IMG/VR virus record: IMGVR_UViG_3300030616_000016
Span: 167,648-231,647 of that record
Reading direction: 5' to 3' (one strand)
Length of the DNA: 64,000 nucleotides
In this document: positions 5,668 through 23,600 of the stretch, piece after piece
How the letters are laid out: each line of letters opens with the position of its first letter
How positions within the stretch are numbered: the first letter of the stretch is position 1
Notes under the pieces: generated by a model
What the model saw: only the letters and a program-made list of their open reading frames with translations
The model's database searches: none
Told to the model about the DNA's origin: nothing
Translations under genes and position numbers: made by a program

Positions 5668-6360
5668 ATGCCACTTACAGAAGGCAACCTTCCTCGTGAA
5701 AACAGCATCTACACCAGAAGCTATAACAGTTTTGGTGGAGTTGATATGCTGGTAACGTTTGCGGGAAAGGTAATCGGCGAATTACAGGGTATTTCATACT
5801 CTGTAACCAGAGAAAAGGCTCCTCTTTATACTATGGGTAGTGCGGATCCTAGAAGTTTTAGTCGTGGCAAGCGTGGTATTGCTGGCTCACTGATCTTCTT
5901 AGTATTTGACCGCGATGCTCTACAGTGGGGTCTTCGTGAGTCTGGTAAGTTCTTGGCCAATAGATGGGAAGTACAGCAGGCTCAGAGCCTTGCTACTGGT
6001 GAAGGATATTCCTTCTCCAATACAGGCACAGTTGCTGCTGGTCTGAATACCACAAATGATCTGGAATCTGGTCTGTACGACAAGGTTCCGTCAAGAGCAT
6101 GGTATGCTGACCAGGTACCGCCATTTGACATTGTCATCTTGGCGGCCAACGAATATGGTCATCTGGCAAGAATGGAAATCCGTGGTGTTGAAGTTCTTAA
6201 CTCCGGTTCCGGAATGTCAATTGACGATATTACAACTGATCAGAGTTGTACTTTCGTGGCCAGGTCTATCGTTCCTTGGTTTGGTCAGAAGTATGTTAAC
6301 CCAGCCACAGGACAGGTGTCTGAATCTCAGGGTGCAAACCCGAGTTCATTCTCCAATTAA
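5668..6360 (+). CDS. Tail tube protein
   Basis: Motifs SFGGVDM...IGELQGISYSVTREKAPLYTMGSADPRSFSRGKRGIAGSLIF and DQVPPFDIVILAANEYG. AGGAGG RBS. Follows the sheath and precedes a terminator. Confidence 0.88.
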   Translation: MPLTEGNLPRENSIYTRSYNSFGGVDMLVTFAGKVIGELQGISYSVTREKAPLYTMGSADPRSFSRGKRGIAGSLIFLVFDRDALQWGLRESGKFLANRWEVQQAQSLATGEGYSFSNTGTVAAGLNTTNDLESGLYDKVPSRAWYADQVPPFDIVILAANEYGHLARMEIRGVEVLNSGSGMSIDDITTDQSCTFVARSIVPWFGQKYVNPATGQVSESQGANPSSFSN

Positions 6361-6407: not shown

Positions 6408-6422
6408 TCATGAGTATTGAAT

Positions 6423-7400
6423 ATGGCAAACATAGCTGACTGGATAGCATATAGCGGAAGACCTGGAATAACAGCAGATAGCCAAAGAGCTATAAATCAA
6501 GCTCTTGCAACAGGCAACAATACCCAGTTAAATACCGTCCAAAAGACATTCCTAAGTCCATCTGAATTCTGGGCTGGTTCCGACCACTATAAAATCAACA
6601 CAGAATATAGGCCTGATTGGGCATTGCGCGCAGCAGAAATAAACAATGTTCAAAGGTCAGATACAGTGTCATTTAGTGGGTCAGATATTACCGGTGTCAT
6701 ATGGTTTCCTATATTTGGTCAAGGCGCCGGCTTTGAAATACAAACATTACAGACAGTAACCGTAAATACTTTTAGAGATCTTATTCCTGGCAGAACGCTT
6801 GGGAGAGCTTCTGCTTCTGGCTACGCCAGAGGAACACGTACATGTGCAGGTTCTTTGGTTATGATTATGGCTGAACAAGAACCCTTTGTGCAGTTTGCCC
6901 CAGTTATTGAAGCCAATAGAAATAGTACTGATGCAGGCGACAACCCGATACTGATAGATAGAATTCCTCCATTCTATCTTATCCTGAATGCTACCTCTGA
7001 AGTTCCTCAGGCTTACAACAATAACGGAACTCAAAAAGTTCAGTCAGACGGATCCTATACTGCTCATAGCGGTATCACAGTGCTCAAGAATGTTCACTTT
7101 GTGAGTACCGGCACAACTTACAGCGTCAACGATTTATACACAGAAACAATGTATCAGTTTGTATGTGAAGATGTGATGCCTTTTGCTACTAAAGACGTTG
7201 TTGGTGTTTTGAGAAAGCTTAAGACTAGATTAAACAGCCAGCGCGACAATAATCCAAAAGCATCTCAGAAGGCTAGAGAGGCAATGATTAAACTGCAGGG
7301 CAAAGACAAGATTGATCCTTATTATGAAATAGAAACCTTTTTGACGAGAAATACTGGTGGCCGTGGAGAATTTACTTCTGACGCCGCTAGAGGGTTATAA
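6423..7400 (+). CDS. Tail tube paralog / tube initiator (T4 gp48/gp54-like role)
   Basis: Aligns by eye with the tube: SFSGSDI...LQTVTVNTFRD...GYARGTRTCAGSL...DRIPPF...VHFVSTGTTYSVNDLYTE. ATG at 6423 chosen over TTG at 6417. Confidence 0.75.
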   Translation: MANIADWIAYSGRPGITADSQRAINQALATGNNTQLNTVQKTFLSPSEFWAGSDHYKINTEYRPDWALRAAEINNVQRSDTVSFSGSDITGVIWFPIFGQGAGFEIQTLQTVTVNTFRDLIPGRTLGRASASGYARGTRTCAGSLVMIMAEQEPFVQFAPVIEANRNSTDAGDNPILIDRIPPFYLILNATSEVPQAYNNNGTQKVQSDGSYTAHSGITVLKNVHFVSTGTTYSVNDLYTETMYQFVCEDVMPFATKDVVGVLRKLKTRLNSQRDNNPKASQKAREAMIKLQGKDKIDPYYEIETFLTRNTGGRGEFTSDAARGL

Positions 7401-8281: not shown

Positions 8282-8401
8282 ATGCCAGGTGGTGATGGAA
8301 GAGGCCCAAGACAAGGCTCATACCAGAGATCTAAAACAGGCAGCAAGGGCAAACGACAGCTTGCTGGACAGAGATGCCCTATGAAGAGCAAGAAGAAGTA
8401 A
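8282..8401 (+). CDS. 39-aa basic Gly/Arg/Lys-rich peptide, DUF5320-like N-terminus (absent from the ORF track)
   Basis: Translated by hand: MPGGDGRGPRQGSYQRSKTGSKGKRQLAGQRCPMKSKKK*. A strong GGAGGTG RBS lies just upstream. The ORF fills the intergenic gap. Confidence 0.7.
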   Translation: MPGGDGRGPRQGSYQRSKTGSKGKRQLAGQRCPMKSKKK

Positions 8402-8455
8402 CACAAATATTAATATCCAAATTAAGATGAACAATTATTATTAAGGAGCATCAAG

Positions 8456-9019
8456 ATGGCAGAAAAGCAAGTAGATAAAATTCCAGGTGAAATGCCTCCA
8501 GTCGAAATGCCTGTTCCGGAAGGAACACAGCAGCTTGCAGAAGATGAAGGCACAGGTCTTCCCAAAGGATTTGGCACCCCAGGTGCATCTGGCGCCCCAG
8601 GGGTACATCGGCCAGAACCATCTCTAAACCCAGAAGAAAAACCAGTAGACACACCTGATGTCAGTCGCGGAGATATTCCAGCCGAGATTCTTGGTCTTGA
8701 GCAATTTCTTCCAGCCGGGCTTACTGTAGAAATGGTTTGGCAATATAAACAGCAGTATGGAAATGTTTATATTGTTGAGGTCTGTGATCAGATCTATCTA
8801 TATCGTGCAATGGCCAAGCCTGAATACAAGAGCATCATGCAGATGGAAGGCGCTACAAGAGAAATGCAGGAAGAAAAGATTGCTGAGAAATGCGTTCTCT
8901 TCCCTGCGCTTGGTATTGAAGGCCTTAGAGTTGGACTGGCTGGTTTGGCATCGACTCTCACAGAGTATATTATGAGAGCCAGTGGATTTGGAGCGATGTC
9001 CACACCAACAAAATTATAG
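8456..9019 (+). CDS. Tail assembly chaperone
   Basis: YKQQYGNVYIVEV...YLYRAMAKPEYK...EKIAEKCVLFP...GLASTLTEYIMRASGF, with a disordered Pro-rich N-terminus. Lies between the tube and tape-measure genes. Confidence 0.72.
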   Translation: MAEKQVDKIPGEMPPVEMPVPEGTQQLAEDEGTGLPKGFGTPGASGAPGVHRPEPSLNPEEKPVDTPDVSRGDIPAEILGLEQFLPAGLTVEMVWQYKQQYGNVYIVEVCDQIYLYRAMAKPEYKSIMQMEGATREMQEEKIAEKCVLFPALGIEGLRVGLAGLASTLTEYIMRASGFGAMSTPTKL

Positions 9020-9028
9020 AGGATATAA

Positions 9029-9793
9029 ATGGGAGAATTATGCGAGGCCTATCTAGGTCCAGAATATCTTCCAGGTCCTCTTATATCGGGTGAATATTTA
9101 AAAGGTGAGGTGGCAGAAGATCCAATTTTGTCACCTCATCTTGCACCTTATATCGCCGCTCTATTAAAGAAGTACGACGATATATTTCATGTTAAGTATA
9201 ATGATCAGGATTTTATAATCCGGCCATTGACTTCAAATGAATATAAGATACTGTGTAAGCTTAGGTTATACTTCGATCCTCAATTAGGGTTCGAAAAGAC
9301 AAGGCCTAGGTTTAGTGTTGTAAGCCTAGAAGATATATTTATAGACTGTATTCTTTATCCTGAGAATGTACTTGATATGGATTTAGATGCATATGTTGTT
9401 GATATGCTTATAGAGACTGCAATACAATATTCGGGATGGGATTCACAGGAGGATATATTTGTAACAAAAGCTCAAATGCAAGCTCATGTAACATCAGATC
9501 TATTAGAGGGCATGTTTACATTTATTAGACGAGCACACCCAGGTCTTGGTGATCGCGATCTTGAAAACAAGAATATTATTGATATAATGAAGTTAATAGC
9601 AAGTGCTGAATTGATATTGGATAAGCCATTCGAGATAGTCACCAAAGATGATAAATCAGATGCTTCTAAAATATCAACCGAAGTTATGATCAAAGAAGAC
9701 TTGGCAGGTCTTAATAAGCTTAATATGCAAGGCTTAAATAAGCCGGAGCTAGAATATGCCCGTAACGCCCAGAGAAGAACAGGAAAGAAGTAG
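9029..9793 (+). CDS. Second tail assembly chaperone (paralog of the upstream gene)
   Basis: LKKYDDIFHV...FIIRPLTSNEYK...DCILYP...LIETAIQYSGW parallels the previous protein. It has its own AGAGGA RBS. Confidence 0.68.
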   Translation: MGELCEAYLGPEYLPGPLISGEYLKGEVAEDPILSPHLAPYIAALLKKYDDIFHVKYNDQDFIIRPLTSNEYKILCKLRLYFDPQLGFEKTRPRFSVVSLEDIFIDCILYPENVLDMDLDAYVVDMLIETAIQYSGWDSQEDIFVTKAQMQAHVTSDLLEGMFTFIRRAHPGLGDRDLENKNIIDIMKLIASAELILDKPFEIVTKDDKSDASKISTEVMIKEDLAGLNKLNMQGLNKPELEYARNAQRRTGKK

Positions 9794-12700
9794 TGGATGG
9801 CTTGGTTATGGCGCGGGATCATTAGCTGTTCTAGCTGGCGCATATATGCTTGGGAAGAATCCAAAGACGCTATACGCAATGGGCGAAACTTTGGACACCG
9901 CAGTATCAGCTATATCAGATGTAACCACCTTTGGTAAGCAACACATAGTAGAAAATCTTAGTAGAATCACTGGCAAGTTCGGTTCTTCCATAGAGACAGC
10001 TGCCAGAAGCCCTTCATCTACAAAAGCACTTAATCCAGAAATATTCAATTCCCTGCAAGGCGCTCTAAGCGCCTGGGAATCTGGCGCCGCAACTACACAG
10101 ACACTTAGAGACGCTCTTGCTGCCAAGTTCTCTAACGTAACGACGGTTAGACCGGGTGTACGTAATCTTCAAGTAAAAGAGATAACACAAGCATTCAGTG
10201 ATATCACTCCTGACGACCCTTTCACTTTATTTGGAAGATCTATAGATAAGAAGGGCGCTGGTCTTCTTAAACAGGCTCAAGAGATAGGAATTGTAGACAA
10301 AGACTGGGTTGCTGACAAAGGCATGTTTATTGATGGTCAGAGATTGGTTGACGCCAATATATTCAGGCCTGAGAAGTGGGGAGAATCTCTTGTAAAAACA
10401 TTACGTGGTGCTACTGGCGGATTCCTTACCGACTCATTACTGCCAAGTACCCATCTTCTTCGAGAGATTCCAGATATAGCTGAGATCTCAACAAAAGGGT
10501 TGGGCAAGCATATAAAAGAGGGAACACTAGATAAAGCCTTTAAGATTGGCGATCAACTTGTTGGTATAACAAAAGATAATTTTGTTGTTGACTTGCCTAA
10601 GCTTCGTGTTGGCCCAGTAGGAAATGCTATTTCTAAGGCACACGCTATAAGAAAGGGGCTTGTAAGACATAGAACAGTTGATGAGATGAAGGAGCTTCTC
10701 GCTTCCAGGGGGCAAGATCTTAATCCGCGTCAAGAAAAGCTATATAGAGCATTAGAAAATAGATTCCTTAGCGAGTATGTTGGCATTGGTCCTCAATACG
10801 CAAGTGAAACGGCGCTTCCAAAGATGCTGCATGGCTGGCTGGCAAAGTTCTACCAGACGGACCTTAAGCCAATATCGATGATTCCAGGCAAGTCATTCGA
10901 TGAGGTATGGGAAAATCTAAGCATTGGTCAAAGAGTCAAGGTTATGGCCAAAGGAGATGTTGATAGCGTCGCCTGGGCCAGAACTTCGATTGCTGGCGAT
11001 CAAGACATTCGATCTTTTGAACAGATACAAGAGATAAAAAGAGCTATCCATGGAGAAAGCTGGGAAGCTGCGCTGGATCCGAGTGGTGAAATATCTAAAA
11101 CAACATCGGTGTTTGGAAGAAGATCAGTAACCAATGCAGAGCAGTTTATGGCAGAAATGCTTGATGAAGAATTCAAGCACACTATGTCACACAACTACTA
11201 TGCCTATGATACTGCTGAACTTGCTGGTAACTGGGCACATACTGTCTTCACGACTCCATTTAGAATAGCATCCAACATGTTTGGATTTGGACTCAAGCAT
11301 GACTCGTTAGGAAAGACTGCGCTCAGAGCCACGGTTGGCATTCCTATGGCCGGATATCTCGCATGGCAGGGAGCAAACTATTTAGATTTTCTTACTGAGC
11401 AGACAACGACATTTAGTCCAATCAAAGGTGTTGCCAGAACATATGCAGAAGCTCAGATAGCCAAACAAAGCATGGCTAATCTTATAGGCATATCATATGC
11501 ATCTAAAACAGCAGAAAGTATGATTGGAATAGATATCGATTCTCCTATTTCCGTTGCGCTTAGAAGCATAGGACTGCCTATACTTGGAGCTAAGATTGGA
11601 CAAAAGATAAATCCTGGAATGGGACGACCTGGTATGTATGTCGGTATTGGGCTAGCCGCGCTTACTTTATCAGACGACCTATCTAGAGATGCAGATGAAT
11701 TAAGAGATATATATGAAGGAAGAAAAGAAGTTCCTGTTAGAAAGTCTCGCTGGTGGATGCTTGGATGTTTTGACCCTCACCAAAGCGTAATGCTTGAAGA
11801 TGGAAGCCTTGTCCATGCAGAAGATGTAGACAGTGGAATGGTAGTCATTAACGATATAGGAGAATATACAGAGGTGACTAATGTCTCTGTAAGAATTACC
11901 GATAAAGACGAGGAGCTAATTTCTATTCTGCCTCATGGATTTCCTTATCCAACAAAAATAACAGGCAATCATGAAGTTCTTGTCCACAGACGTCCTTGTA
12001 TCAAGCCATATACATATAAAACTGGATGTCATCCAAGACGAATCACGAATAGTTCGTGTAGATCTTGTCCGAATGCCTCGCCGGATCTTAATCTGTCATA
12101 TGTCAGAGCCGATGAGCTGAGGCCGGACGACTTTCTTATTCTGCCTAGGCTAAAATGCAACACCTCTATTGGGCTTATCGACCTGTCTGATTACCATGAT
12201 CTATTTGTCATCGATAAAGAAAAAATAGCAGCAGGTCAAAGATTGCATGGTGGTGTTCGGCGTGCTCCAAAAAGCAAATATACTAATAGAATTATACATC
12301 CCGATAAAGATCTCGGTATGCTTTTAGGTTGGGTTTTAGCAGAAGGAAGTAAGCATAGCGACAACTCTATTGAATGTGTGTATAATATTAGTGAAAGCGA
12401 TTTTGCCTTGCAAATGGGTAAAATAGCGCATGCCAAGTTTGGAGCTAGTTATAGCCTATCTGAAAGAGATGGTAGTACTGGGAGAATTGTTATAGGTAGT
12501 AAATTTTTACTCGGTTTTTGTACCAGTGTTGGCATACTGCCAAATAAAACTCCGAACATACGCAGAATGCTAGATTATGGTGAGTGTTTTGTTAAAGGGT
12601 TTGTCATAGGTGCTGTATATGGAGATGGAAGCTATACCGACGGCCATTGGAGATTCAAGGCGAAAAGACTACAGACATGTATTTTCTTGAGAGATATGAT

Positions 12701-15194
12701 CCATGCAGTCGGAGGAGCTGCTTCTATATGTCGAAACTCGTCTATGCTTGAAGGCAAGAGGTTTGATGCGTATTCAGTCACAATAATAGAATTAGATTTT
12801 GCTCTTATTAAGCATTATTATAAAGGAATACCAAAAACCAAGCAGTTAAAATCTGCAATTGGCTGTAAAGACTATGTTTTATATACAATCAGAAGCATAG
12901 TCGCCTCCGATCCTCCTGAAATTGTTTATGACTTCCATGTTAGAGACAGGAATAGCATCTGTTTGCCTGGGCATGTTGTTCACAACTCAGATCCCTTTGA
13001 AGGTGGAGACACTGATTATTACAGGCCTCACCTTATAGCCACAATGCTTTCTGATACCTCTGCCATGGAAGCAAAGTATGGTTCCAAGTCCGCATATTGG
13101 TCTCATGGCACAATGTTCCCTACGCCTCATAATGTATTTGGCTTGAGTATACTGGCTGACCCATACTATGTAGAAAGAAAGCATTACTATGATAGGCCGT
13201 ATCCAATAACAGGAAGATCTAATCTTGCAGAATTTCCTATCTGGGGCAACATACTTGATGCTACTCTTGGAGAGGTTATTAAGCCTACCAAGGTAATGCA
13301 TGAAAATGAACTGGCGCATTATATAACTCAAACCCCTGAGTTCTCTGGAGACAAAGGACTGCAGAGTGTAGCTCAGCAGCTGTCTCTAGCACAAATTAGG
13401 CCTGGTAAGGTGCTGCCAAGAGTAGAAGGAACGCAGGATGACATTGGTCATGCAATATATGACATGACTGAATTTGCTGGATTAAAGGGATTTCTATTTA
13501 CGTCTCTCAAGAAGCAAGTCACTGGAAGCCCTGACTTCTCTGACCAAGGCGCAAGATGGGCTAGTGCAGATGATATTTATAATAAATCTGATGCATACTA
13601 TGATCTACAGCTTGGTGGTATGCTAGGTGCAACCGAGTTCTTCAGAAGATTTTTACCACATAGACAAAACCAAATAGACTATGTTAATCCTCTAAGCAAT
13701 GAAGCTCCGGCATGGCTCCCTGGTAAAAGGTCTGTTTTTGGCGATACAGACTTTATAGATTTCCATAGCTCAGATCCATACACTCGTATCAAGGAGGGGT
13801 CTAAGCGTCTTCCAGGTGCTCAGTATGAAGCTATACACGAACTACATTCTGGTAAAAAAGGCGAATATGATGCTTTTGATAGAATGAAGATATTGGCTGA
13901 TGTCAGCCCATATTCTAATGCCTTCAAGTACTATAAGAACATAGTGGATAAGATGGCTCAGGACGGCCAGCTAGACGGCTATTGGATGGATGAATACCTT
14001 GAAATAGACAGGAGAATTAAAGGAGAAGGACTGCCCGACTTTGAAGCAGAGACAGCAAGTAAAGAGCTTGGTATTTCTGGTGCAGCTGCTGGGACTGCTG
14101 GCCTACTAAATAATCACCTTAGAATACCATGGGTAGGTACTAAGTTAATGAGCATGGATCAAGATCCGCTGGTAGACTATCAAGAGAAGATTTCATTCAA
14201 TAATGACTTCAATGATTGGACTAAACCAATAGACACTATGTTGATGCCATACATGCGCGCACAAAGTGCAAGAGGAGCTATCTCTGGAGCTTTTGGTGGT
14301 GCAACACTAGGTGTTCTTAGCTCAGCTGCTGGAGGTTCATACGCCGGTACTGTAGGAGCTATCGGAGCAGGCGTTGGAACAGTGATGGGATTGGCCGGCG
14401 TTAATGCTCCTGAAAATGAAATCAGAAGAAGGTCTATGGAAGAATACTTCGATAGCTTAGAATATCTGAAGTACAATAAACTAGCTGACAAGGCTGGCGA
14501 ACAAGGCAATATTGCTCTTGCAAATAGATTAAGAAGAATGTCTAAGAGAACCATGGTAGGACTCGACTATTCTCAAGACACAACCTCTTTCTATAAAGCA
14601 GCTTACAGCGCTCTCCCAAAACCGGACAGGCAGTATCTGCAGGCTTTTATCCAGGTTGATCCGGGTAAAAGACCTGAAGTCCTTGACAAAGTTCCAGATT
14701 ATATGCAGCCTATTCTTATGCGTCTATGGAAAGATCCAAAGTCCGAAGCTGATGCCGGCAAGCTATCAAGAGTAGACCAAAACAATAGAGCCCATCAGGC
14801 TGCTTTATCGTATGTAAACAGTCACGGCGGCGTCCCAGATGATGATTCTATGGTATGGCATCCAGATATTAGCATTGAAGATGTCAAACTAAAGACCATT
14901 AAAAATCTTGGTGCTGACATACATAACTTTGGGTTTTGGGGAACTGATGAGCGAGATCTTGAAAGAACGCGGCCTTATATCAAACCCCTTCCATTCTCAT
15001 ATAATACAAACACTTACCAATCTAATAGGTTGAATTTTACTAATAATATGTTACAATATGGTTTTAGCAATGTGTATGTTGATTTGATAAGAAATCCTAG
15101 CAGGCAGCCAGAAAATGTATATTCAATTAATATTCAGAGAAATAGACTTGGTGACATTGCAGGGTTTGACAGCAGGTCTGAGGGAAGGTTCTAA
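9756..15194 (+). CDS. Tape-measure-like protein containing an intein (1812-aa precursor, 1405 aa spliced)
   Basis: Follows the chaperones. Helical and Ala/Gly-rich, with hydrophobic and glycine-zipper segments (WLGYGAGSLAVLAGAY; GAISGAFGGATLGVL...GAIGAGVGTVMGLAG). The intein occupies aa 671-1077. Confidence 0.72.
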   Translation: MPVTPREEQERSSGWLGYGAGSLAVLAGAYMLGKNPKTLYAMGETLDTAVSAISDVTTFGKQHIVENLSRITGKFGSSIETAARSPSSTKALNPEIFNSLQGALSAWESGAATTQTLRDALAAKFSNVTTVRPGVRNLQVKEITQAFSDITPDDPFTLFGRSIDKKGAGLLKQAQEIGIVDKDWVADKGMFIDGQRLVDANIFRPEKWGESLVKTLRGATGGFLTDSLLPSTHLLREIPDIAEISTKGLGKHIKEGTLDKAFKIGDQLVGITKDNFVVDLPKLRVGPVGNAISKAHAIRKGLVRHRTVDEMKELLASRGQDLNPRQEKLYRALENRFLSEYVGIGPQYASETALPKMLHGWLAKFYQTDLKPISMIPGKSFDEVWENLSIGQRVKVMAKGDVDSVAWARTSIAGDQDIRSFEQIQEIKRAIHGESWEAALDPSGEISKTTSVFGRRSVTNAEQFMAEMLDEEFKHTMSHNYYAYDTAELAGNWAHTVFTTPFRIASNMFGFGLKHDSLGKTALRATVGIPMAGYLAWQGANYLDFLTEQTTTFSPIKGVARTYAEAQIAKQSMANLIGISYASKTAESMIGIDIDSPISVALRSIGLPILGAKIGQKINPGMGRPGMYVGIGLAALTLSDDLSRDADELRDIYEGRKEVPVRKSRWWMLGCFDPHQSVMLEDGSLVHAEDVDSGMVVINDIGEYTEVTNVSVRITDKDEELISILPHGFPYPTKITGNHEVLVHRRPCIKPYTYKTGCHPRRITNSSCRSCPNASPDLNLSYVRADELRPDDFLILPRLKCNTSIGLIDLSDYHDLFVIDKEKIAAGQRLHGGVRRAPKSKYTNRIIHPDKDLGMLLGWVLAEGSKHSDNSIECVYNISESDFALQMGKIAHAKFGASYSLSERDGSTGRIVIGSKFLLGFCTSVGILPNKTPNIRRMLDYGECFVKGFVIGAVYGDGSYTDGHWRFKAKRLQTCIFLRDMIHAVGGAASICRNSSMLEGKRFDAYSVTIIELDFALIKHYYKGIPKTKQLKSAIGCKDYVLYTIRSIVASDPPEIVYDFHVRDRNSICLPGHVVHNSDPFEGGDTDYYRPHLIATMLSDTSAMEAKYGSKSAYWSHGTMFPTPHNVFGLSILADPYYVERKHYYDRPYPITGRSNLAEFPIWGNILDATLGEVIKPTKVMHENELAHYITQTPEFSGDKGLQSVAQQLSLAQIRPGKVLPRVEGTQDDIGHAIYDMTEFAGLKGFLFTSLKKQVTGSPDFSDQGARWASADDIYNKSDAYYDLQLGGMLGATEFFRRFLPHRQNQIDYVNPLSNEAPAWLPGKRSVFGDTDFIDFHSSDPYTRIKEGSKRLPGAQYEAIHELHSGKKGEYDAFDRMKILADVSPYSNAFKYYKNIVDKMAQDGQLDGYWMDEYLEIDRRIKGEGLPDFEAETASKELGISGAAAGTAGLLNNHLRIPWVGTKLMSMDQDPLVDYQEKISFNNDFNDWTKPIDTMLMPYMRAQSARGAISGAFGGATLGVLSSAAGGSYAGTVGAIGAGVGTVMGLAGVNAPENEIRRRSMEEYFDSLEYLKYNKLADKAGEQGNIALANRLRRMSKRTMVGLDYSQDTTSFYKAAYSALPKPDRQYLQAFIQVDPGKRPEVLDKVPDYMQPILMRLWKDPKSEADAGKLSRVDQNNRAHQAALSYVNSHGGVPDDDSMVWHPDISIEDVKLKTIKNLGADIHNFGFWGTDERDLERTRPYIKPLPFSYNTNTYQSNRLNFTNNMLQYGFSNVYVDLIRNPSRQPENVYSINIQRNRLGDIAGFDSRSEGRF
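11766..12986 (+). mobile_element. Intein with LAGLIDADG homing endonuclease (407 aa)
   Basis: Block A CFDPHQSVMLEDGS, block B KITGNHEVL, LAGLIDADG blocks LGMLLGWVLAEGS and FVIGAVYGDGS, block F VYDFHV, terminal HN followed by a +1 Ser. The exteins join as RWWMLG|SDPFEGG. Confidence 0.93.
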
Positions 15195-18100
15195 TGCCTG
15201 ACAAGCCAGAACAAAGAAGTGGATCAGTAGCGCCTTGGTTGGTTGGCGGAGGGCTATTAGCTTTTGGTGGGTATCAGGGATATAAGCACTTCGGCCAGAA
15301 GCACTTAGGAAATATGGCAAATAATCTAGGCGATGAGATTAAAGCTGTTGTGCCATCAGTAGAACAAACCGAACAAATAATCAAACCAAGTTCTTCCACA
15401 GAATTCTGGCATAAGTTTGACAGAGCAGGAACTCCTGCAGCTGGCATTGGAGCCACAAATTCATTTATGCATGATATAGTTGATGTCGAAGATGCACACT
15501 ATAAAGGATTCGATGAGATTTTAACTCCTAAGAGAGCTGCTGCTTATAACAAAATTGTGACAGCTCAGCTTACCGACTTTCAGTCTGTTATGAATAATAC
15601 ACACGGAACCAATCTTCTTAATATAGAAGCAATCAACGAGTCTATAAATAGTGCAAATACTGGTTTTATTGATGGCATCAGCGAAAGAGCAAAGAGAAAT
15701 ACAGAAACAGCTGGCTTAATAGGAAGGTCTGATGTAGAAGATATATTTTTTGCTCATTATGGAAGAAAGGGTAAAAGAGCTCAAGAGTTCATTGCAAGAG
15801 AGCAGGCTGCTGTATCACAACTGGAAGATATAGCAAGCCGGCTTACAGCATCAACTGGGCATCAAGTTAAAATACAGGCCATTAACCGCAGCGGTGTAGC
15901 TCCAGAAATAGGGCTCAGAGTAGGTGGCGAGTTTATTTCTATGGGCGCCGCCACTGGAACAAGGCTTCAGTTTGGTTCAAATGTATATCAGGGGCCTCAA
16001 GCCATTCTTGGCAGAACAGCTGAAGGCAGGCTAAAGACCATGACCTTTCATGAAGCTTCTGTAAATGTTCTTGAACAAAAAATGGGCGAGCTAAAAGGCA
16101 TCAAGTCTTCAAGTCAGCTTAGATCCAAGATATCCGGTATATTATCCGAGCCTAGAGAGGCCGCAATCTTTTCTAGTCCTGAAGATAAGATGAGAGCTAT
16201 AGCTGGTGTTCCTGGACAACCTATGAGCGCTGCCGATGTCGCTAGAAGTGGTAACATTGTAACTATGCCGAGTATAGTTAAAGAATCAGGCGCACAAGCT
16301 TCAAGAGATGCTGCTGAAACTCTTAGAAGAATAACTGAATGGGCAGGCAAAGAGGATTGGGACGAGACTACTCGCGCAAGAATGTTTCATATAAAACCTG
16401 GACAAAGGATTACTCCAGAGCGCGTGCTAAGGCATTTCGTTACAGCTGTTAAAGGAGATAAGGTAGACAGACTGACTTTCTCTGCTTTTACTTCTTTGAA
16501 AGCTCTTACGGTTGGAGGGATGCTCACTCCGTTTCAAAACATAGCCAAGGAAGGCGGCGAGGAACTACGCACAGGATTGCTTAGAAAATCTCAATCCGCC
16601 AAATATAAATATAATAAGTATTATGGCTATGGAAGGGAAATGAGACGGCAGAATCTTGCTGGGCTTCTTGCAGGTGAGGGTTCTGAGCGTTTGGCTGGAA
16701 GCGTAAGTGGCAAGGTTCATGCTATAGATAAAGTTCAGAAATTAATTGATGGTGAATGGGTAGACGTTCCAGACAAACTAGTTGGCGCGTTAGGTGGTAA
16801 ATTTTCAGGTGGTTCTGGTGTTATGGCTATTAGTGAGGAATTCGGCGATTTATCTCACGAGTCATCTGGAGATTATATGCTCAAAAAGATAAGCGGCTCT
16901 CCTAACAAGAAAATCAAAGATACAATTAATGAACTTGCAAGAAAGGGCAAGCTAGATGTAAGGAATCTAAAAGCAGCGGGTATTACAGTTCGCAAAAAAG
17001 ATGCTCAGGGGCTATTGCGAACTGAAACAGGAAGCCTGGAATTTAGCCAGGCTGCTTTAAAGCAAGCAAGCGAGACAGAAAACTCTCTGGTTATACCCGG
17101 TAAAAGACTTAGAAAAATAAGTGAATCTGGCTATGCTTTTAGGCTTGGGCCTACTAGTGTTTCAGCTACAAGAGGTACTCGATTTATAGGCAAAGGCTCA
17201 GAGGGAGTTCTTGGTGCTTTGTGGTCAACGAATATTAAACCGGAAGTAAGATCTCAAATGGCTTATGCCACAATACAGAGCCTAATGGAAGAATCAGATA
17301 TCAAATATTCTCGCAATTTAGACGAGTTTGCAGCTACTATATCTGGTGAACTAGATAGAGCCGATCCTAATGCCAGATATTTTAAAGGCGTAGAAGGCAA
17401 TCAAAAAAGATGGCAGCAGCTTACAGATCTAATGACTGAAAGAATGCAGAAAGAAGGAGTAGATAAACGTAGCCTGGATAAGTTTAGAGCATCTATGGAA
17501 GGATATGGTCCTGGTAAGACCATAGAATTTGCTGCTGAGGGTCAACACTACAGAGCTAGAGCTACGACACTAACTGGTACTGCGTTTCCTAGAATGTATC
17601 CTCTTGAAGAGGAGACAGCATTGCATGGTACAGTAGGCAGATATAAATCTGAGTATACAAAGAAGCTGGATGATTTTAATAAAGCATTGGCTGGACATGA
17701 GGACCTTCCTGGTGTTCAAAGATTCATGGAAGCTCAAACAAAGAAACATAGTATTCTTGAAGATGTTTTACGCCACGAATCTGTGCCAGATACACTGATA
17801 AGAAACTTCAATGAAGCTGAAACTCAACAGCTAGAGGCCATAAGAGAAATACAAAGAATGGAAGGCGGTCCAATAAAAGGCATAGAGAAGAAGTTTATTG
17901 CACTCAAAACAAGCGAAGAACAGTTTATGTCCAAGCTTACACAGAGAGCGCAAAGTACTCCACGCAGATATAGACCACAAGACTTTATGATGATGGCTAT
18001 AAAAGCTCATGCTGACCCTGAAAACAGAGACACAGGTGTGCTTGAGTATCTGCTTCGCATGCAGGAAGGTAGCCAGGCTCGCCGCAGCTTTCAAAACGTG

Positions 18101-20698
18101 GCTATGGCAGCTGAGCCTTTATTTGGAACAAGTACCAAACAGATTATTGAAGAAGTAGACAAGGGTATTCTATTTGGCAACAAGGCCTTTAGTTTATCAA
18201 ATCCTGATGACGTCGAACAGCTTAAAGTTATTACCAATGTCATGGGTCAGATTAAAGATGCGGCAGATTCTGCAGACGACGAAGTTGTCAATGCCATGTC
18301 CATACAAGACATTCTTAGAAGATCTAAAGGCCAATTTGAAGCTGCTGGATTAGGAGATGTTAATCCAGAAGAGCTTCTAAGTAAAAATCTTGCTATTACA
18401 GGAATGCCAGAAGGCACGTTCATGGATCTGGAAATTGAACAGGCTCTTAAAACAGGTACTGATAAGTTTCTTGTTTCTTCAAAGAATCAAAGAGAAATGA
18501 TACTTCCATCTCTTGGAGCAACAGGAAGGCTGTTTGGCAAAGGTCCTAATGCTGAAATGATATCTTTGAATGAAATGCGCAGGTCTATACTTGGTGCACA
18601 CCATGGGCTGTCTCTTATGTTAGAAGACGGAGAAAACATAGACGCTCTCAGATCCTCATATGCTACATTTCTTAAATCGCTTGCAGAGGAAAGCCATAAA
18701 ACCGGTTTGTTTGGTAGAGCAGGCGAATTGCAGTGGACTAAAAGCGCGTATCCAAACATCAGACAGTTTGATTTCTCAGATATGAGAAGAATGGATTATC
18801 TTCGTCAGGCTAAGGATTGGGCTGGATACCAGGCAGAAGCTGCTACTGTTCATATAAGCAGAGAAATGGCTGAAGAGTTTGGTGCGCTCGACAAGCTTAC
18901 CAAAAAGGGCGCCGATGATCTTTATGCTCATATGCAGTCTTATCCCGGCCTTACTCCTGGAATGCAGAGGACGGTTAAGCTTAGACTAGATGAAAACCTC
19001 AGAGGCAGGCAAATGAAGGTTGGATATGGAATTGCAATAGCCGGAGCCAGAGACTTTGATGCTGACCGTGTTGCTTTGATGTATCTAGGTGATGAGCATG
19101 AAGTTGTTAGAAATCTTTTGAACAACGATCCTAATTTATCCAAAAGCGATGCCAAGGCTATGGCTCGTAAATTTGTTTCTAGCATGAAGCAAGATTTTAG
19201 AGCAGATGCAGAGTCTATAGCATATCTACAACATTCTGAGATGAAGCTTGCACAGCGCGTTGCAGACGCAAACTTTTTATCAGCAACAAACAAGTTACAT
19301 AAAGATGCTAATGTTAATGCTGTTAGAGATATCGTCAATTATATGGGAAGGATTGATGATGTAGAAATTAAGTCTGGTGCTTACGACGATGAGATTCAGC
19401 GAATTCTATCTAAGCACGATATATCTGGTACAGCCGCAGATACGATGATCGACGTATTTAAAAAGAAGCTTGTAGCATCTAAAGAACTTGGTGTAACTAC
19501 AAACAAGCTTATGATGATGCGTAATACTCTTGCCGATAATATGATTAGAGACAAAGGAAGCAGGCAAGCTACTGATTTCGCGATACAATACTTTCATCAA
19601 ATAACACAGTCTCTTATTAGCGCTAGAAAGCATGGAGAAAAAGGTGATGCTTCTAGAGAATTAATCGAACTTCTGCAAGGTAGATCTGTTGATGGTGATT
19701 TCAAGAACCTTACAAGAGCACACAAGGATAAAATAGGCGAGCTGTTAGGAGAATCTCTTGTTGAAGGCGGTCTTGCTGGAGAGGTAAAAGACAGATGGTT
19801 GTGGAGAAGTGTTGATGAAGGCGTGTATGATTCTAACCAAGTTAAGTGGATAATAGATGAGCAAGCACAAAAGCTAAACGTAAAATCATTCAATGAATTA
19901 AAAGAAACCTTTGTTAACTTGGCAGAAGAAAATCTTAGAAGAAGAAATGAATGGGACGAGTCTAATTTCTTGTTTGAAACAACCATGAAGAAGTCTGGGC
20001 TTGGTAGATTTGCAGAGAGAGGTCAATGGTCTGTTAGACAGTTTATTGAACAGGCTCCTAAGCATATGAAGAAGCTTGGTGCCTTTGTTAAGAAGCAAGC
20101 AGATCTTCCTGAGTTTGCTCGTCTTGTTTCTCATATAACTGGAATCAATGCTATTGCAGCTTATGCTGACGACGCATCAAGGGCTACTATAAGAGAGGCT
20201 GAGAAGACAGCTTCAGATGCTTTAAATTATGCAAAGGCTGGCGATGCAGCTGCTGACATAGCAACTTCCAAAGGTAAATCATGGCTTACCAGACTGTTTG
20301 ATAAGTCAGACGAATACTTGGCTGGATCACCAAAAGCTAAGTACGCACTTGCTGGAGCTGCTATAACAGGTGCTGCTGCCTTCACATTTAGAATGTTTAG
20401 CGACCCGACCATGCCAGCTCCAGAAAGACCTGGTCCAGCCGCTCCGCCTGCTATGCCAATGGATCCAAGACAGCGCGGCATAACTCAATATCAAGGCGCT
20501 CCGCCGGCTCCTGTTTCTCCTTCATATGGCCTTGCAGATAGATTCATATCCTCAGGCTTAAGCGCTGCTCCAGAAATAGCTGTTGCAGAAATGACTAATT
20601 CACTGGACGGGCGTGGTTCTTTTGATATAATGGATCAGAGCCTAAGCGATCCACAATTCCAGGAAGAGTACGAATCGGCTCAGAGAGGTAGGTTTTAA
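15194..20698 (+). CDS. Giant virion protein with a two-barrel RNA polymerase beta-prime-like double-psi-beta-barrel (DFDAD); putative virion RNA polymerase
   Basis: aa ~1160-1300 are collinear with beta-prime motifs: LKSLAEESHKTGLFGR, VHISREMAEEF, HMQSYPGL, GRQMKVGYGIAIAGARDFDADRVALMY. Both termini are hydrophobic. Coupled to both neighbours by TAATG overlaps. Confidence 0.65.
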   Translation: MPDKPEQRSGSVAPWLVGGGLLAFGGYQGYKHFGQKHLGNMANNLGDEIKAVVPSVEQTEQIIKPSSSTEFWHKFDRAGTPAAGIGATNSFMHDIVDVEDAHYKGFDEILTPKRAAAYNKIVTAQLTDFQSVMNNTHGTNLLNIEAINESINSANTGFIDGISERAKRNTETAGLIGRSDVEDIFFAHYGRKGKRAQEFIAREQAAVSQLEDIASRLTASTGHQVKIQAINRSGVAPEIGLRVGGEFISMGAATGTRLQFGSNVYQGPQAILGRTAEGRLKTMTFHEASVNVLEQKMGELKGIKSSSQLRSKISGILSEPREAAIFSSPEDKMRAIAGVPGQPMSAADVARSGNIVTMPSIVKESGAQASRDAAETLRRITEWAGKEDWDETTRARMFHIKPGQRITPERVLRHFVTAVKGDKVDRLTFSAFTSLKALTVGGMLTPFQNIAKEGGEELRTGLLRKSQSAKYKYNKYYGYGREMRRQNLAGLLAGEGSERLAGSVSGKVHAIDKVQKLIDGEWVDVPDKLVGALGGKFSGGSGVMAISEEFGDLSHESSGDYMLKKISGSPNKKIKDTINELARKGKLDVRNLKAAGITVRKKDAQGLLRTETGSLEFSQAALKQASETENSLVIPGKRLRKISESGYAFRLGPTSVSATRGTRFIGKGSEGVLGALWSTNIKPEVRSQMAYATIQSLMEESDIKYSRNLDEFAATISGELDRADPNARYFKGVEGNQKRWQQLTDLMTERMQKEGVDKRSLDKFRASMEGYGPGKTIEFAAEGQHYRARATTLTGTAFPRMYPLEEETALHGTVGRYKSEYTKKLDDFNKALAGHEDLPGVQRFMEAQTKKHSILEDVLRHESVPDTLIRNFNEAETQQLEAIREIQRMEGGPIKGIEKKFIALKTSEEQFMSKLTQRAQSTPRRYRPQDFMMMAIKAHADPENRDTGVLEYLLRMQEGSQARRSFQNVAMAAEPLFGTSTKQIIEEVDKGILFGNKAFSLSNPDDVEQLKVITNVMGQIKDAADSADDEVVNAMSIQDILRRSKGQFEAAGLGDVNPEELLSKNLAITGMPEGTFMDLEIEQALKTGTDKFLVSSKNQREMILPSLGATGRLFGKGPNAEMISLNEMRRSILGAHHGLSLMLEDGENIDALRSSYATFLKSLAEESHKTGLFGRAGELQWTKSAYPNIRQFDFSDMRRMDYLRQAKDWAGYQAEAATVHISREMAEEFGALDKLTKKGADDLYAHMQSYPGLTPGMQRTVKLRLDENLRGRQMKVGYGIAIAGARDFDADRVALMYLGDEHEVVRNLLNNDPNLSKSDAKAMARKFVSSMKQDFRADAESIAYLQHSEMKLAQRVADANFLSATNKLHKDANVNAVRDIVNYMGRIDDVEIKSGAYDDEIQRILSKHDISGTAADTMIDVFKKKLVASKELGVTTNKLMMMRNTLADNMIRDKGSRQATDFAIQYFHQITQSLISARKHGEKGDASRELIELLQGRSVDGDFKNLTRAHKDKIGELLGESLVEGGLAGEVKDRWLWRSVDEGVYDSNQVKWIIDEQAQKLNVKSFNELKETFVNLAEENLRRRNEWDESNFLFETTMKKSGLGRFAERGQWSVRQFIEQAPKHMKKLGAFVKKQADLPEFARLVSHITGINAIAAYADDASRATIREAEKTASDALNYAKAGDAAADIATSKGKSWLTRLFDKSDEYLAGSPKAKYALAGAAITGAAAFTFRMFSDPTMPAPERPGPAAPPAMPMDPRQRGITQYQGAPPAPVSPSYGLADRFISSGLSAAPEIAVAEMTNSLDGRGSFDIMDQSLSDPQFQEEYESAQRGRF

Positions 20699-23600
20699 TG
20701 AATAAAAATATTAAAATAGGTCCAGTACAATTAAGTGTTGACGCTGATAGCTTTTCTATATCAGATAGAAAGGTTAATACAATGGTGCCTGGTCTTCGAA
20801 GTAATATACCAAAGGTCATCAATACAGGAAAGAGCAGGCTCGAATATTCCTTCAGTGCTATATTCGCAAACGAAGAAGAGATCAACACAAAGCTAAGACC
20901 TATTATTGCCTATTTCAAAGCAGTTCCTTTTATTACTGTAAAATCAGATGTATTGAATAAGCTTCTTGCAACTCGTCTTGTATCAAAAGCTGTTGCGAAT
21001 CAAAGCAGCTCCTATGATAAGCTAGGTTCTAATTTTATACAGAATAAACTTATCAGCGATCTTCGTAATGCAATATACGAACATCTTTTAGATCCTATTG
21101 TTAAGAGCTACATGAATTTGACTGTTATAGATAAAACTATAATAGATCAGTTTATAAAAGAAAAACTTGGTGTGTCATTGGATGATATAAATCGACCAGC
21201 TCTAAGAACTCTTGTGTCAAGATATGTAGAGCTAAATTACTATGTGTCTAAGGCCACAATCCCTATCAAGGGTGGATCTAACGAACAGCAGATACGTGAA
21301 TTAAGAAAGCATATAAGAGAAAAACTCGCTGGCCAGCTAAAAGAAAGAGATGTTATAGACAGAGCAAAAACTGCTGGTATAGTACAGGTTGCTGATGCCT
21401 CTGATGTATATGATGGTGACACTTTTGTTGTTAGTGGAACAACATATCGTTTATTTGGCGTAGATGCATTTGAAACAGTAAGACCAGGAACTCAGCTTGG
21501 TCCAGGTCAAGAAAAGAAACCTGAGAAATCATACGCAGCTTCCGCTAAATCCTTTCTTGTAGACAGACTTGTTGGTCAGAACTTTACTCTATCTGAAGTT
21601 GGAACTAGAACATATAATCGTGTTTTAGGAATATGCGAATCCGTATCTCCAAGCCATGGAGAGAATGCTAATGTTGGTTTAGAGATGGTTAGCCAAGGCA
21701 TAGCGCTTCCATCTGGCGTTGCAAGTATGGGTAGATATGCAACTATAGAAAGCTTGCCATATCTCAAAGCTGCTAAAACTGCTGCAGAATCTGGGTTGGG
21801 GATATGGAGTCAATCTGAAATTCAAGTGCCAGAGCTTTGGAGAAAGTATGCACAAAATATTAACAACTTTGCTAATCCGTCAAGTCCGACTGTTTTAGAT
21901 TCAGACATACAAGAATTGACAATAAAGCCTGCATCTGTTCTTAAACAGCTTATCGATTCTTTAATTGAAGAGCTTGAGGGTCGTACTCCTAATATAGGTA
22001 TTAACTTTGTTGCATCTGCTCAGCCAATCTTAGATGCATATGAGCAGAGCATTGTATCTGAAGACAAGAAAAAAGAGGACGTAGATAGAGTTTCTGAGTT
22101 TATTGGATTCCCAGAAGATCTTATCCCGTCATGCTTTGCTGGTATTTCATATTCAGCAGTGCACGATTTACCACAGGCCATACAGGCACAGTTTCATTTC
22201 TCAGTGTTCAATCATGCTCCTTATGGTCCTACTTTTGGCTTCAAGTCTGACGTAGTTCAGCAAAACGGAGTTTCAGCGGTAGTATCAGATCCAGACATAA
22301 CATATTCACGTTTAGTGCAAGGCTATGTTAGCAAGGAATTTTTGGAGGAGCCAGCATCCAAACAATACCTAACAGCATACACGCCAGCTAAAGACTTTAC
22401 CATACACTATAATGATGTAGACACGATTGTTAAGAAGACATCAAAAGCTAAATTAAGAGAGTCAGATATTAAGACTAGCGAAAGAGTGCAGAAGTCAAAG
22501 GAAATGTTGAACAAGCGCGAATCTGTTGTGTTCATAGGGAAGCGAATTACTATATCTCCTGATTCTGGTGAGATAGAAATATCAATATTGGAGGATGAAG
22601 AAAAGAAACAGTCAACTGTACATAAGCTTAATAATATACAAATTGAATCTGTAAGCTGCAACATAACAAATAACATTGTCCATTTACCTATTGAAGCTGC
22701 CGCTATTCCAACTGCTCAACACATTGGAAGAGGTATAGGTTCTGTGTCGTTAGAGATTTCTTCTACAGATGAGAACTCTATGGCTGTTTTTAGAACTCTT
22801 GAGCATGCTATTCAAAATGCAATGCATATATCCAATCAGTATGGAGCTCCTACTTCTTTCAGAATAACTAATCCAACAATTAATTTGTCTGGAGCCAAAG
22901 ACTTTGTTTTCGATAATATAGTTGTTAGCAATGACAGATCAGCTCCAGGTAAGTATAATATGAGGATTAATCTGGTCGAAAGCTTTAATGCCGAGGAAGA
23001 CACAGAAGAGAAATTGATACCTAAGATTGATTTTGATTTCAAGGATGGCTCTGGTGTCGCAAAGAAAGTAGTAGAGGCATTAAAAGAACACGCTGGTAGT
23101 CCATTTTATGACAAGTTTATGTCTACTTTCTTCCCGATGACAAAGCCTAGTAGGTCTGTTTCTTCTGATATAGAAGAGTATGTAAATACATATCCTCTTA
23201 TGCTTCTATTTGCTCACACCCATAAAGACACGCCAAATCCGGTTCTTTTGGATGCATACGGAGAAAATATAGGATTTATAGAAAGCTTTTCTAATATTGT
23301 AAATAGAGTTAAATATGACAACATAACTCCCAAAGCTGTTAATATGAGAGACAATCTCATTGAAAGATTGTATCAAATTGATCGCGCATGGTTCGTAGAT
23401 ATAGCTAGCTCTCTTCCAATAAACATAAGCACTGCAATAAATGAAAGAAATCCTTTTAGCACAGCGTCTTCAGTACAAGATGATGTAAGAAAGTTTAGCA
23501 ACCAGTCAATAGTATTTGACAAGGATAATTATAATCCAAGCTATTTGATAAAAGGAGGTAAGTGGGTCATTGGCCCATGGGGTAAAGGACCAGGCGCTAC

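What the first reader, a model, noticed from the sequence alone, without database searches (positions are those of the whole stretch)
11766..12986. Homing intein inside a tape-measure-like structural protein
Seen: a complete 407-aa intein with two LAGLIDADG motifs at RKSRWWMLG|SDPFEGG. Known: phage inteins mostly sit in nucleotide-binding enzymes such as terminases, helicases, polymerases and ribonucleotide reductases, and they target highly conserved sites. Inference: the insertion marks RWW-x-LG-x-x-PFEGG as an unusually conserved functional motif in this protein class, and tail assembly would depend on splicing.
Basis: partly seen in the sequence, partly recalled or inferred. Interest (0 to 1): 0.65.

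Follow-up and report, generated by a model that had tools for sequence, protein, structure and literature searches.

The report
Homing intein in a giant phage tail protein
A self-splicing, mobile protein element (an intein with a homing endonuclease) really does interrupt a 1,405-residue virion protein of a marine-sediment jumbo phage. That protein family, which is not the tape measure, carries inteins at 14 or more different sites.

Summary
Window 11766..12986 encodes a 407-aa in-frame insert (Cys1 ... His-Asn, then Ser+1) in the 1812-aa ORF 9756..15194. Natural intein-free alleles (70% and 60% identical) read straight across the site. All splicing blocks and both LAGLIDADG motifs are intact. 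A profile that includes this insert matches solved inteins (PI-PkoII, E 8e-32).

The host is the homologue of Bacillus phage 0305phi8-36 gp145, a virion protein found by mass spectrometry. It is encoded between the tail chaperonins and the presumed tape measure. So it is a tail-module structural protein, but probably not the tape measure. The region around the intein models as a compact 353-residue domain (pLDDT 87.6, pTM 0.84) with no known fold.

The unexpected result concerns the family. At least 2108 sequence clusters belong to it, and it is almost free of cysteine. In 173 members sampled, 50 carry one to three inteins, at 14 or more sites that lie in conserved blocks (p = 0.0016). The motif hit here is the most often invaded.

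The window's intein is an orphan lineage. It sits one codon upstream of the common site and has no close relative in the length ranges searched. Splicing, endonuclease activity and dependence of tail assembly on splicing are all untested.

The parts
9756..11765 (+). N-extein of the host virion protein (aa 1-670). Poorly conserved, Gly/Ala-rich, no cysteine.
11655..11765 (+). First 37 residues of the conserved core domain, ending in the motif RKSRWWMLG just before the intein.
   Evidence: A1/A5 alignments; AF2 model mfa586d9a397f of the intein-free allele
11766..12986 (+). Intein, 407 aa, class 1 type (Cys1, terminal His-Asn), with a LAGLIDADG endonuclease domain.
11766..11807 (+). Splicing block A (CFDPHQSVMLEDGS), with the Cys1 nucleophile.
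   Evidence: C1 invariant in A4
11955..11984 (+). Splicing block B (KITGNHEVLV), with the TxxH motif (T66, H69).
   Evidence: T66 and H69 invariant in A4
11997..12068 (+). Cys-x9-Cys-x9-Cys-x2-Cys insert after block B (C78, C88, C98, C101). It looks like a zinc ribbon.
   Evidence: Shared with inteins at family sites 193, 248 and 666; absent from the main group at site 40/41. Zinc binding is inferred only.
12312..12350 (+). LAGLIDADG motif 1 (LGMLLGWVLAEGS), acidic residue E193.
12594..12632 (+). LAGLIDADG motif 2 (KGFVIGAVYGDGS), acidic residue D287.
12921..12986 (+). Splicing blocks F (IVYDFHVRD) and G (GHVVHN), with terminal His406-Asn407.
   Evidence: D389, H406 and N407 invariant in A4
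12987..12989 (+). Ser+1 codon, the first residue of the C-extein and the nucleophile for transesterification.
12987..13937 (+). Remainder of the conserved core domain (SDPFEGG ... KILADVSPYS). The end coordinate is approximate.
12987..15194 (+). C-extein (aa 1078-1812, plus the stop codon). Conserved, and homologous to 0305phi8-36 gp145.
8456..9793 (+). Two tail-chaperonin-like genes (187 and 254 aa) directly upstream of the host gene.
   Evidence: The 254-aa product matches gp144 (E 2e-6). The two products share a weak paralogous segment (E 0.001), as described for gp143/gp144.
15194..20698 (+). 1834-aa gene in the position of gp146, the more likely tape measure.
   Evidence: Synteny. No sequence match to gp146, which is the usual case for tape measures.
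20698..27549 (+). 2283-aa baseplate-hub-like protein with SNase and lysin-like domains.

Best explanation
Window 11766..12986 is a genuine class 1 intein with a two-motif LAGLIDADG homing endonuclease. It is inserted in frame in the gene for a large, cysteine-free virion protein, the homologue of Bacillus phage 0305phi8-36 gp145. The phage is a 232-kb jumbo myophage from marine sediment.

Inferred mechanism, following established intein chemistry: the 1812-aa precursor is translated. Cys671 makes an N-S acyl shift. The thioester is transferred to Ser1078. Asn1077 cyclises and releases the intein. An O-N shift then joins ...RWWMLG to SDPFEGG..., giving a 1405-aa mature protein. That junction is the sequence natural intein-free alleles show.

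The freed intein, if its endonuclease is active, would cut intein-less alleles during co-infection and copy itself in by repair. The insertion interrupts a confidently modelled loop inside a compact, conserved 353-residue domain of unknown fold. The unspliced protein is therefore probably non-functional, and production of this tail-module protein would depend on splicing.

The host family as a whole is a hotspot for such elements.
For: Shown:
- The insert is in frame and clean relative to colinear intein-free alleles in a syntenic relative.
- Cys1, TxxH, VxD, His-Asn and Ser+1 are all present, and they are invariant across 14 related inteins.
- A profile containing this sequence matches solved inteins (PI-PkoII 8e-32, PI-SceI 1.6e-10).
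- BLASTP links the insert to an intein with Pfam support at the neighbouring site in P0006 (E 1e-13).
- Both LAGLIDADG acidic residues, E193 and D287, are present.
- Host identity: the C-extein matches 0305phi8-36 ORF145, a 'virion structural protein identified by mass spectrometry', and Acinetobacter phage ME3_35, with the same gene order of sheath, tube, tube paralogue, chaperonins, this gene, giant gene, hub.
- The core domain models at pLDDT 87.6 and pTM 0.84. The site lies between strands 26-29 and 46-50, where pLDDT is about 89-93.
- Family context: 2108 cluster representatives. Of 173 members, 50 carry 62-65 intein-size inserts of the form C...HN|S/T/C at 14 or more positions. Inteins cluster by site on a tree. 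Sites lie in conserved blocks (p = 0.0016).
- Contigs from two marine-sediment metagenomes of different studies hold the junction between intein and C-extein.
Against: - Splicing and endonuclease activity are inferred from residues only.
- Pfam's own intein and LAGLIDADG models do not reach their cut-offs on this sequence alone. phmmer of the intein alone against PDB gave only chance hits.
- The intein sits on a very long branch (1.75 substitutions per site) and is at most 26% identical to any other intein found. Word-indexed searches found no close relative. That pattern also fits a decaying element.
- No intein-free allele of this same phage was seen in the two runs, so current mobility is not shown.
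- The location of gp145-type proteins in the virion is not known.
Confidence: 0.88

Rival explanations
1. The intein splices, but its endonuclease is dead or dying. It would be a fixed, vertically inherited relic that is no longer mobile.
For: It has a long orphan branch, at most 26% identity to any other intein, and no close relative among proteins of 224-712 or 997-3171 aa in 5.8 billion sequences. Its GC content is almost the same as the host gene's (0.38-0.42 against 0.42-0.45). Only intein-bearing junctions were seen in two metagenomes. Mini-inteins without an endonuclease exist at the neighbouring site (P0061 151 aa, P0159 190 aa), so loss of the endonuclease does happen in this family.
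Against: The frame is fully open over 407 aa. Both LAGLIDADG motifs keep their acidic residues, and the conserved Lys263 and Gly residues are retained. The word-indexed searches are insensitive to distant relatives, and contig data cannot show that rare alleles are absent.
Confidence: 0.4
2. The host protein is itself the tape measure, or a second tape measure. The intein would then interrupt a length-determining ruler.
For: The gene directly follows the chaperonin-like pair, which is the usual tape measure position. The protein is very long, has Gly/Ala-rich hydrophobic stretches, and is helical in its C-terminal half.
Against: - The authors of the 0305phi8-36 work assign the tape measure to the next gene and note that the chaperonins are 'one gene removed' from it.
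- No tape measure family in Pfam, PHROGs or NCBIfam matches the host.
- The family is strongly conserved, with 1426 representatives at E<=1e-30. Tape measures typically diverge beyond recognition.
- The invaded region is a compact domain with pTM 0.84, not an extended helix.
Confidence: 0.12
3. The insert is a Hint-type autoprocessing domain that cleaves the precursor into two fragments, rather than ligating them. It would resemble bacterial intein-like or hedgehog-type domains.
For: The profile also gives weak matches to hedgehog and BIL domains (E 2e-4 to 5e-4).
Against: The canonical terminal His-Asn and Ser+1 are present. A complete endonuclease domain is present. Intein-free alleles are contiguous through the site. 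Matches to true inteins are far stronger.
Confidence: 0.03

Closest known systems
Large LAGLIDADG inteins of class 1, such as PI-PkoII (2cw7), the archaeal V-ATPase inteins and PI-SceI (1dfa)
   Same: The blocks occur in the same order (A, B, LAGLIDADG 1, LAGLIDADG 2, F, G), with Cys1, TxxH, terminal His-Asn and a Ser/Thr/Cys at +1. The profile match is 8e-32 to 1.6e-10.
   Different: The host is a phage virion protein rather than a polymerase or ATPase. This intein carries a four-cysteine insert after block B. It is too divergent for Pfam's models to reach their cut-offs.
Inteins in actinobacteriophage tape measure, portal and minor capsid proteins (bioRxiv 10.1101/2025.01.02.630785)
   Same: They are inteins in structural genes of tailed phages. 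This shows that structural hosts are rare but known.
   Different: The host family is different: the gp145 type has no InterPro or Pfam tape measure signature. The phage group differs too (0305phi8-36-like jumbo myophages), and here many sites occur in a single family.
Bacillus phage 0305phi8-36 gp145 (ORF145, ABS83703.1) and Acinetobacter phage ME3 ME3_35
   Same: They are homologous to the exteins (tblastn E 3e-17 and 2e-13) and occupy the same place in the tail gene order. gp145 was detected in virions by mass spectrometry.
   Different: In gp145 the hit flanking the site starts at C-extein residue 3, but I did not check it for inteins. Its function is unknown.
Large-terminase inteins of the same phage lineage (BtI1, phiCbK-like phages)
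   Same: They are homing inteins in morphogenesis genes of related or comparable phages. This genome's own terminase gene also holds a LAGLIDADG-type insert.
   Different: Those lie in an ATPase domain, which is the classical kind of intein target.

Membership tests
Intein (class 1) | In-frame insertion that is absent from otherwise colinear homologues | tested here: met
   P0003 and P0004 read through the site. The syntenic locus L014 lacks the 1221 bp.
Intein (class 1) | N-terminal Cys or Ser nucleophile and the block B TxxH motif | tested here: met
   C1, T66 and H69 are present and invariant in A4.
Intein (class 1) | C-terminal His-Asn followed by Ser, Thr or Cys | tested here: met
   H406 and N407, then S1078 of the host.
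Intein (class 1) | Hint-fold splicing domain recognised by curated models or solved structures | tested here: inconclusive
   Pfam Intein_splicing scores 24.5 bits, below the 35.8-bit cut-off. A profile including 13 relatives matches solved inteins strongly. No structure of the intein itself was predicted, because both fold jobs went to the host.
Intein (class 1) | Protein splicing activity | not testable with these tools
   Needs expression and mass spectrometry.
LAGLIDADG homing endonuclease (two-motif, single-chain) | Two LAGLIDADG helices, each ending in an acidic residue | tested here: met
   LLGWVLAEG (E193) and GAVYGDG (D287) align with the motifs of 13 related inteins and with PI-PkoII.
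LAGLIDADG homing endonuclease (two-motif, single-chain) | Match to the curated family model (Pfam LAGLIDADG_3) | tested here: not met
   No hit on P0002 at E<=1. P0006's inteins do hit it (2e-15). So the endonuclease is shown to be LAGLIDADG-like by alignment, not by the curated model.
LAGLIDADG homing endonuclease (two-motif, single-chain) | Site-specific cleavage of the intein-less allele | not testable with these tools
   Needs an enzyme assay.
Phage tail tape measure protein | Match to a tape measure family model | tested here: not met
   No hit in Pfam, PHROGs or NCBIfam.
Phage tail tape measure protein | Extended, mostly helical architecture without compact conserved domains | tested here: not met
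   The core domain of 353 residues has pTM 0.84 and little helix in its first 120 residues. The C-terminal half is helical.
Phage tail tape measure protein | Gene position downstream of the tail chaperone pair | tested here: inconclusive
   The host gene is directly downstream of the pair, but so, one gene further on, is the 1834-aa gene. In 0305phi8-36 that gene's counterpart is the assigned tape measure.
0305phi8-36 gp145-type virion protein | Sequence homology over the conserved C-terminal part, plus conserved gene order | tested here: met
   tblastn E 3e-17 to gp145. The profile finds 2108 representatives. Synteny holds in 0305phi8-36, ME3, L014 and L015.
0305phi8-36 gp145-type virion protein | Presence in the virion | not testable with these tools

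The most novel reading that the evidence does not exclude
The conserved core of gp145-type proteins is a cysteine-free domain of new fold in a tail-internal or ejected protein. It is the densest intein hotspot yet seen in any virion protein, with at least 14 site-specific lineages and up to three inteins per protein. The window's intein would be a separate, orphan lineage that entered the most frequently invaded motif one codon upstream of the common site. That would mean repeated, independent targeting of the same few residues. The family would also be a natural library of mutually orthogonal inteins.
Probability: 0.4. Interest if true: 0.72.

Novelty: new member of a known kind. Interest (0 to 1): 0.58.

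Why it matters
The intein itself is of a standard kind. Two results go beyond that.

First, the host is new. It belongs to a very large family of giant phage virion proteins (at least 2108 clusters at 50% identity) that has no annotation in Pfam, PHROGs or NCBIfam. The family has a confidently predicted domain with no known fold and almost no cysteine.

Second, inteins have invaded this family again and again, at 14 or more sites that track its most conserved blocks. Inteins normally mark catalytic or binding centres of essential enzymes. Their density here suggests that this unannotated domain carries out something essential and strongly constrained during tail assembly or genome delivery. 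The intein sites also point to the residues worth mutating first.

The many site-specific lineages could also be a source of orthogonal splicing elements for protein engineering.

Tried and rejected
- Pfam, PHROGs and NCBIfam on the host and its intein-free homologues gave no family.
- phmmer of the intein alone against PDB gave only chance T-cell-receptor hits.
- tblastn of the N-extein against 50,697 phage records found nothing. The N-extein is poorly conserved.
- The first AF2 model, 771 residues from 20 sequences, was mediocre (pLDDT 67.5). Its searches found only helical-bundle noise (Foldseek PDB none at E<0.5; VIA best Z 5.8).
- The deep-alignment model of the core domain also found no fold in PDB or the ESM Atlas (best Foldseek E 5.5; VIA wide best Z 2.2; Atlas TM below 0.3). 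This does not prove the fold is new.
- The feature search of the ESM Atlas gave only unnamed clusters scoring below 0.8.
- Close relatives of the intein were sought by word search among proteins of 997-3171 aa and of 224-712 aa. None were found. Proteins of 713-996 aa were not covered.
- I tested whether the window's intein belongs to the common lineage at site 40/41. The ML tree places it elsewhere on a long branch, but the AU test does not reject one clade (p = 0.30). This is unresolved.
- I looked for an intein-free allele of this phage in two metagenomes. No joint was seen. Contigs are fragmentary at depth 2-7, so this says little.
- The DNA flanking the site is only 57-71% identical between the window and L014 within 12-30 bp of the site. 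L014 therefore cannot tell us the endonuclease's target.
- The Moorella phage MTATph1 homologue, whose tblastn match looked interrupted, has no intein: one continuous profile match and 0 Cys.
The exteins were searched separately by reference, and the natural intein-free allele P0003 stood in for the spliced product. The only joining was a short comparison of flanks inside a script.
Full report
**1. The observation**

ORF 9756..15194 on the + strand encodes 1812 aa. They begin with Cys and end with His-Asn, and Ser follows. The flanks read RKSRWWMLG and SDPFEGG.

A word-indexed search with the whole protein found 28 homologues. The two closest are P0003 (1395 aa, 70% identity) and P0004 (1393 aa, 60%). 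Both are colinear with the exteins and read RKSRFWGLG-SDPFEGGD straight through the site. P0003 is encoded on a Logan contig (L014) whose genes match the window one for one in order and size. At the DNA level the 1221 bp are a clean insertion. The coordinates and the description are therefore confirmed.

**2. Is it an intein?**

Pfam's Intein_splicing model matches only weakly (E 2.7e-5, below its cut-off), and no LAGLIDADG model matches this sequence alone. The insert is, however, homologous to an intein with Pfam support at the neighbouring position in P0006 (BLASTP E 1e-13).

I aligned it with 13 inserts from the same protein family (A4). The following residues are invariant or nearly so:
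- C1
- T66, N68 and H69 (block B, TxxH)
- G188, A192, E193 and G194 (first LAGLIDADG motif)
- G282, G286, D287 and G288 (second LAGLIDADG motif)
- V387 and D389 (block F)
- H406 and N407 (block G)

A profile of that alignment matches solved inteins: PI-PkoII 8e-32, V-ATPase inteins 1e-19 and 2e-17, and PI-SceI 1.6e-10. With a Cys1 nucleophile this is a class 1 intein by sequence. Splicing itself is inferred.

One unusual feature is a Cys-x9-Cys-x9-Cys-x2-Cys insert after block B (C78, C88, C98, C101). The intein shares it with inteins at other sites of the family, but not with the main group at the neighbouring site.

**3. The host protein**

The window is the last 64 kb of a 231,647-bp IMG/VR virus record estimated to be 95% complete. 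Contigs from two marine-sediment metagenomes of different studies hold the sequence.

The C-extein matches 0305phi8-36 ORF145, annotated 'virion structural protein; identified by mass spectrometry'. It also matches Acinetobacter phage ME3_35 and homologues in a few other jumbo myophages. In those genomes the order is:
- sheath
- tube
- tube paralogue
- one more gene
- two tail chaperonins
- gp145
- gp146, the 'hypothetical tape measure'
- hub

The window has the same order. Its 254-aa gene matches gp144 (E 2e-6).

The 0305phi8-36 authors assign the tape measure to gp146. They note that the chaperonins are one gene removed from it. So the host is a tail-module virion protein that lies beside the tape measure, and it is probably not the tape measure itself.

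**4. The invaded domain**

I did not build a spliced sequence. Instead I modelled the natural intein-free allele.
- A first model of P0003:625-1395 from 20 sequences was mediocre (pLDDT 67.5).
- A second model of the first 353 residues of the conserved core, from 92 intein-free sequences (A5), was confident (pLDDT 87.6, pTM 0.84).

The second model is compact rather than extended. The intein site is model residue 37|38. It lies in a loop between two short strands (26-29 and 46-50), and the loop is modelled at pLDDT 89-93.

No fold match was found:
- Foldseek against PDB gave nothing below E 5.
- The exhaustive VIA search gave a single chain at Z 2.2, where unmatched models usually reach Z 7-8.
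- The ESM Atlas gave TM below 0.3.
- In the viral library, searched with the first, 771-residue model, only family members matched. These include the 0305phi8-36 protein and one entry named 'Large polyvalent protein associated domain-containing protein'.

Some family members carry an N-terminal SNase nuclease domain. In the window that domain sits in the hub protein.

The exteins contain no cysteine at all, and 80 of 88 family members shorter than 1500 aa have none.

Taken together, these features suggest a protein that sits inside the tail and may be ejected with the DNA. This is an inference, held with modest confidence.

**5. The family is an intein hotspot**

A profile of the conserved part (A2, 780 positions) was run against 1.84 billion cluster representatives. 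It found 2108 proteins at E<=1e-3 and 1426 at E<=1e-30. Many of the best hits were 1600-2600 aa long and matched in two to four pieces.

I re-analysed the 173 proteins in hand.
- 65 inserts of 150-510 aa were found. Of these, 62 could be cleanly delimited as C...[H]N followed by S, T or C.
- The inserts lie in 50 proteins: 39 with one, 10 with two and 1 with three.
- They occupy at least 14 profile positions.

| Profile position | Inserts |
|---|---|
| 40/41 | 18, counting the window's |
| 45-47 | 3 |
| 109 | 4 |
| 140 | 1 |
| 193 | 4 |
| 247/248 | 11 |
| 279-281 | 4 |
| 293 | 6 |
| 308 | 2 |
| 332 | 1 |
| 463 | 1 |
| 664 | 3 |
| 666 | 5 |
| 685 | 2 |

Two of the inserts at 40/41 are mini-inteins without an endonuclease.

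On a maximum-likelihood tree of 60 inteins, the lineages follow their sites almost perfectly. The tree needs 13 label changes where 12 is the minimum, against a shuffled mean of 40.8. That is the pattern expected of site-specific homing lineages.

The sites lie in conserved blocks. Mean information in the 8 flanking columns is 2.27 bits against 1.76 for random positions (p = 0.0016). The window's site is at the 81st percentile.

These counts come from the 150 best-scoring representatives plus the first search's hits. They are lower bounds.

**6. Where the window's intein fits**

It sits between G and S (RWWMLG|SDPFEGG). All other inteins at this motif sit one residue downstream (RWWEFGR|SPYEGG). 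In each clade the intein precedes the available Ser.

It is only 20-26% identical to any other intein of the family, and its best BLAST hit is at site 248. The tree places it on a very long branch away from the well-supported 40/41 clade. The AU test does not reject a single clade (p = 0.30).

Word-indexed searches found no closer relative among proteins of 224-712 or 997-3171 aa. It is best described as an orphan lineage of unresolved origin. It could be an independent invader, or an old, fast-evolving member of the lineage at this site.

**7. Mechanism and what remains inferred**

Shown:
- the insertion itself
- the intact splicing and endonuclease residues
- homology to inteins
- the identity and genomic context of the host
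- the family-wide pattern

Inferred from established intein chemistry:
- Cys671 acyl shift, transfer to Ser1078, Asn1077 cyclisation and ligation, yielding a 1405-aa product
- homing by cleavage of intein-less alleles during co-infection
- dependence of the protein's function on splicing, because the insert breaks a structured loop in a compact domain

No intein-free allele of this phage was seen in the two metagenomes. The contigs are too fragmentary for that to carry weight.

**8. Comparison and novelty**

Inteins in phage structural genes are rare but on record. Tape measure, portal and minor capsid inteins occur in actinobacteriophages. Terminase inteins occur in this very lineage and in phiCbK-like phages. 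My literature searches found no description of inteins in gp145-type proteins. The searched library is not complete.

The element is therefore a new member of a known kind. The new information is the host family, its domain of unknown fold, and the density of intein sites in it.

No alternative genetic code was used. The exteins were searched separately by reference.

Noticed in passing
G000:C1:43593-45647 (+), outside the window (locus L018): A 684-aa ORF matches Pfam Volactin (an actin-like protein, E 4e-51). It is interrupted by a clear intein with LAGLIDADG motifs (Intein_splicing E 1e-12). So this jumbo phage has an actin-like gene that carries an intein.
   Followed up: partly
G000:C1:155776-158877 (+), 161311-164316 (+), 8381-10618 (-), 63465-67067 (-) (loci L019, L017, L016, L020): Further LAGLIDADG or intein-type matches occur in the same genome. 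They lie in the large terminase gene, in an unannotated 1001-aa ORF, in a radical-SAM protein, and in or beside the DNA polymerase III alpha gene. The genome as a whole is rich in homing elements.
   Followed up: partly
window 9756..11765 and 12987..15194; family-wide: The host exteins contain no cysteine, and 80 of 88 family members under 1500 aa contain none. All 13 cysteines of the precursor lie in the intein. No explanation was tested.
   Followed up: partly
window 11997..12068: There is a four-cysteine insert (C-x9-C-x9-C-x2-C) after splicing block B. It is shared with inteins at family sites 193, 248 and 666 but not with the main group at site 40/41. It may be a zinc ribbon.
   Followed up: partly
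window 20698..27549: The 2283-aa hub-like protein carries a staphylococcal nuclease (SNase) domain at aa 251-372 and an endolysin-like segment near aa 2010-2122. In other phages the SNase domain is instead fused to the N-terminus of the gp145-type protein (P0098, P0100, P0121).
   Followed up: partly
window 5668..6360 and 6417..7400: These two paralogous genes follow the sheath gene and match phrog_9206, which is labelled 'major head protein'. By synteny with 0305phi8-36 gp140 and gp141 they are the tail tube and its paralogue. The PHROG label therefore looks wrong.
   Followed up: no
L015 8001..14198 (protein P0006); also P0105 and P0090: Some homologues carry two or three inteins in one protein. 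P0006 has them at 40/41 and at NPIRNTMP|C...HN|TWLPG. P0105 (2643 aa) has at least three delimited inserts.
   Followed up: yes
window 8456..9019 and 9029..9793: The C-terminal part of the 187-aa product resembles the N-terminal part of the 254-aa product (E 0.001). This is the same two-gene chaperonin arrangement, with no frameshift, that was described for gp143/gp144 of 0305phi8-36.
   Followed up: partly
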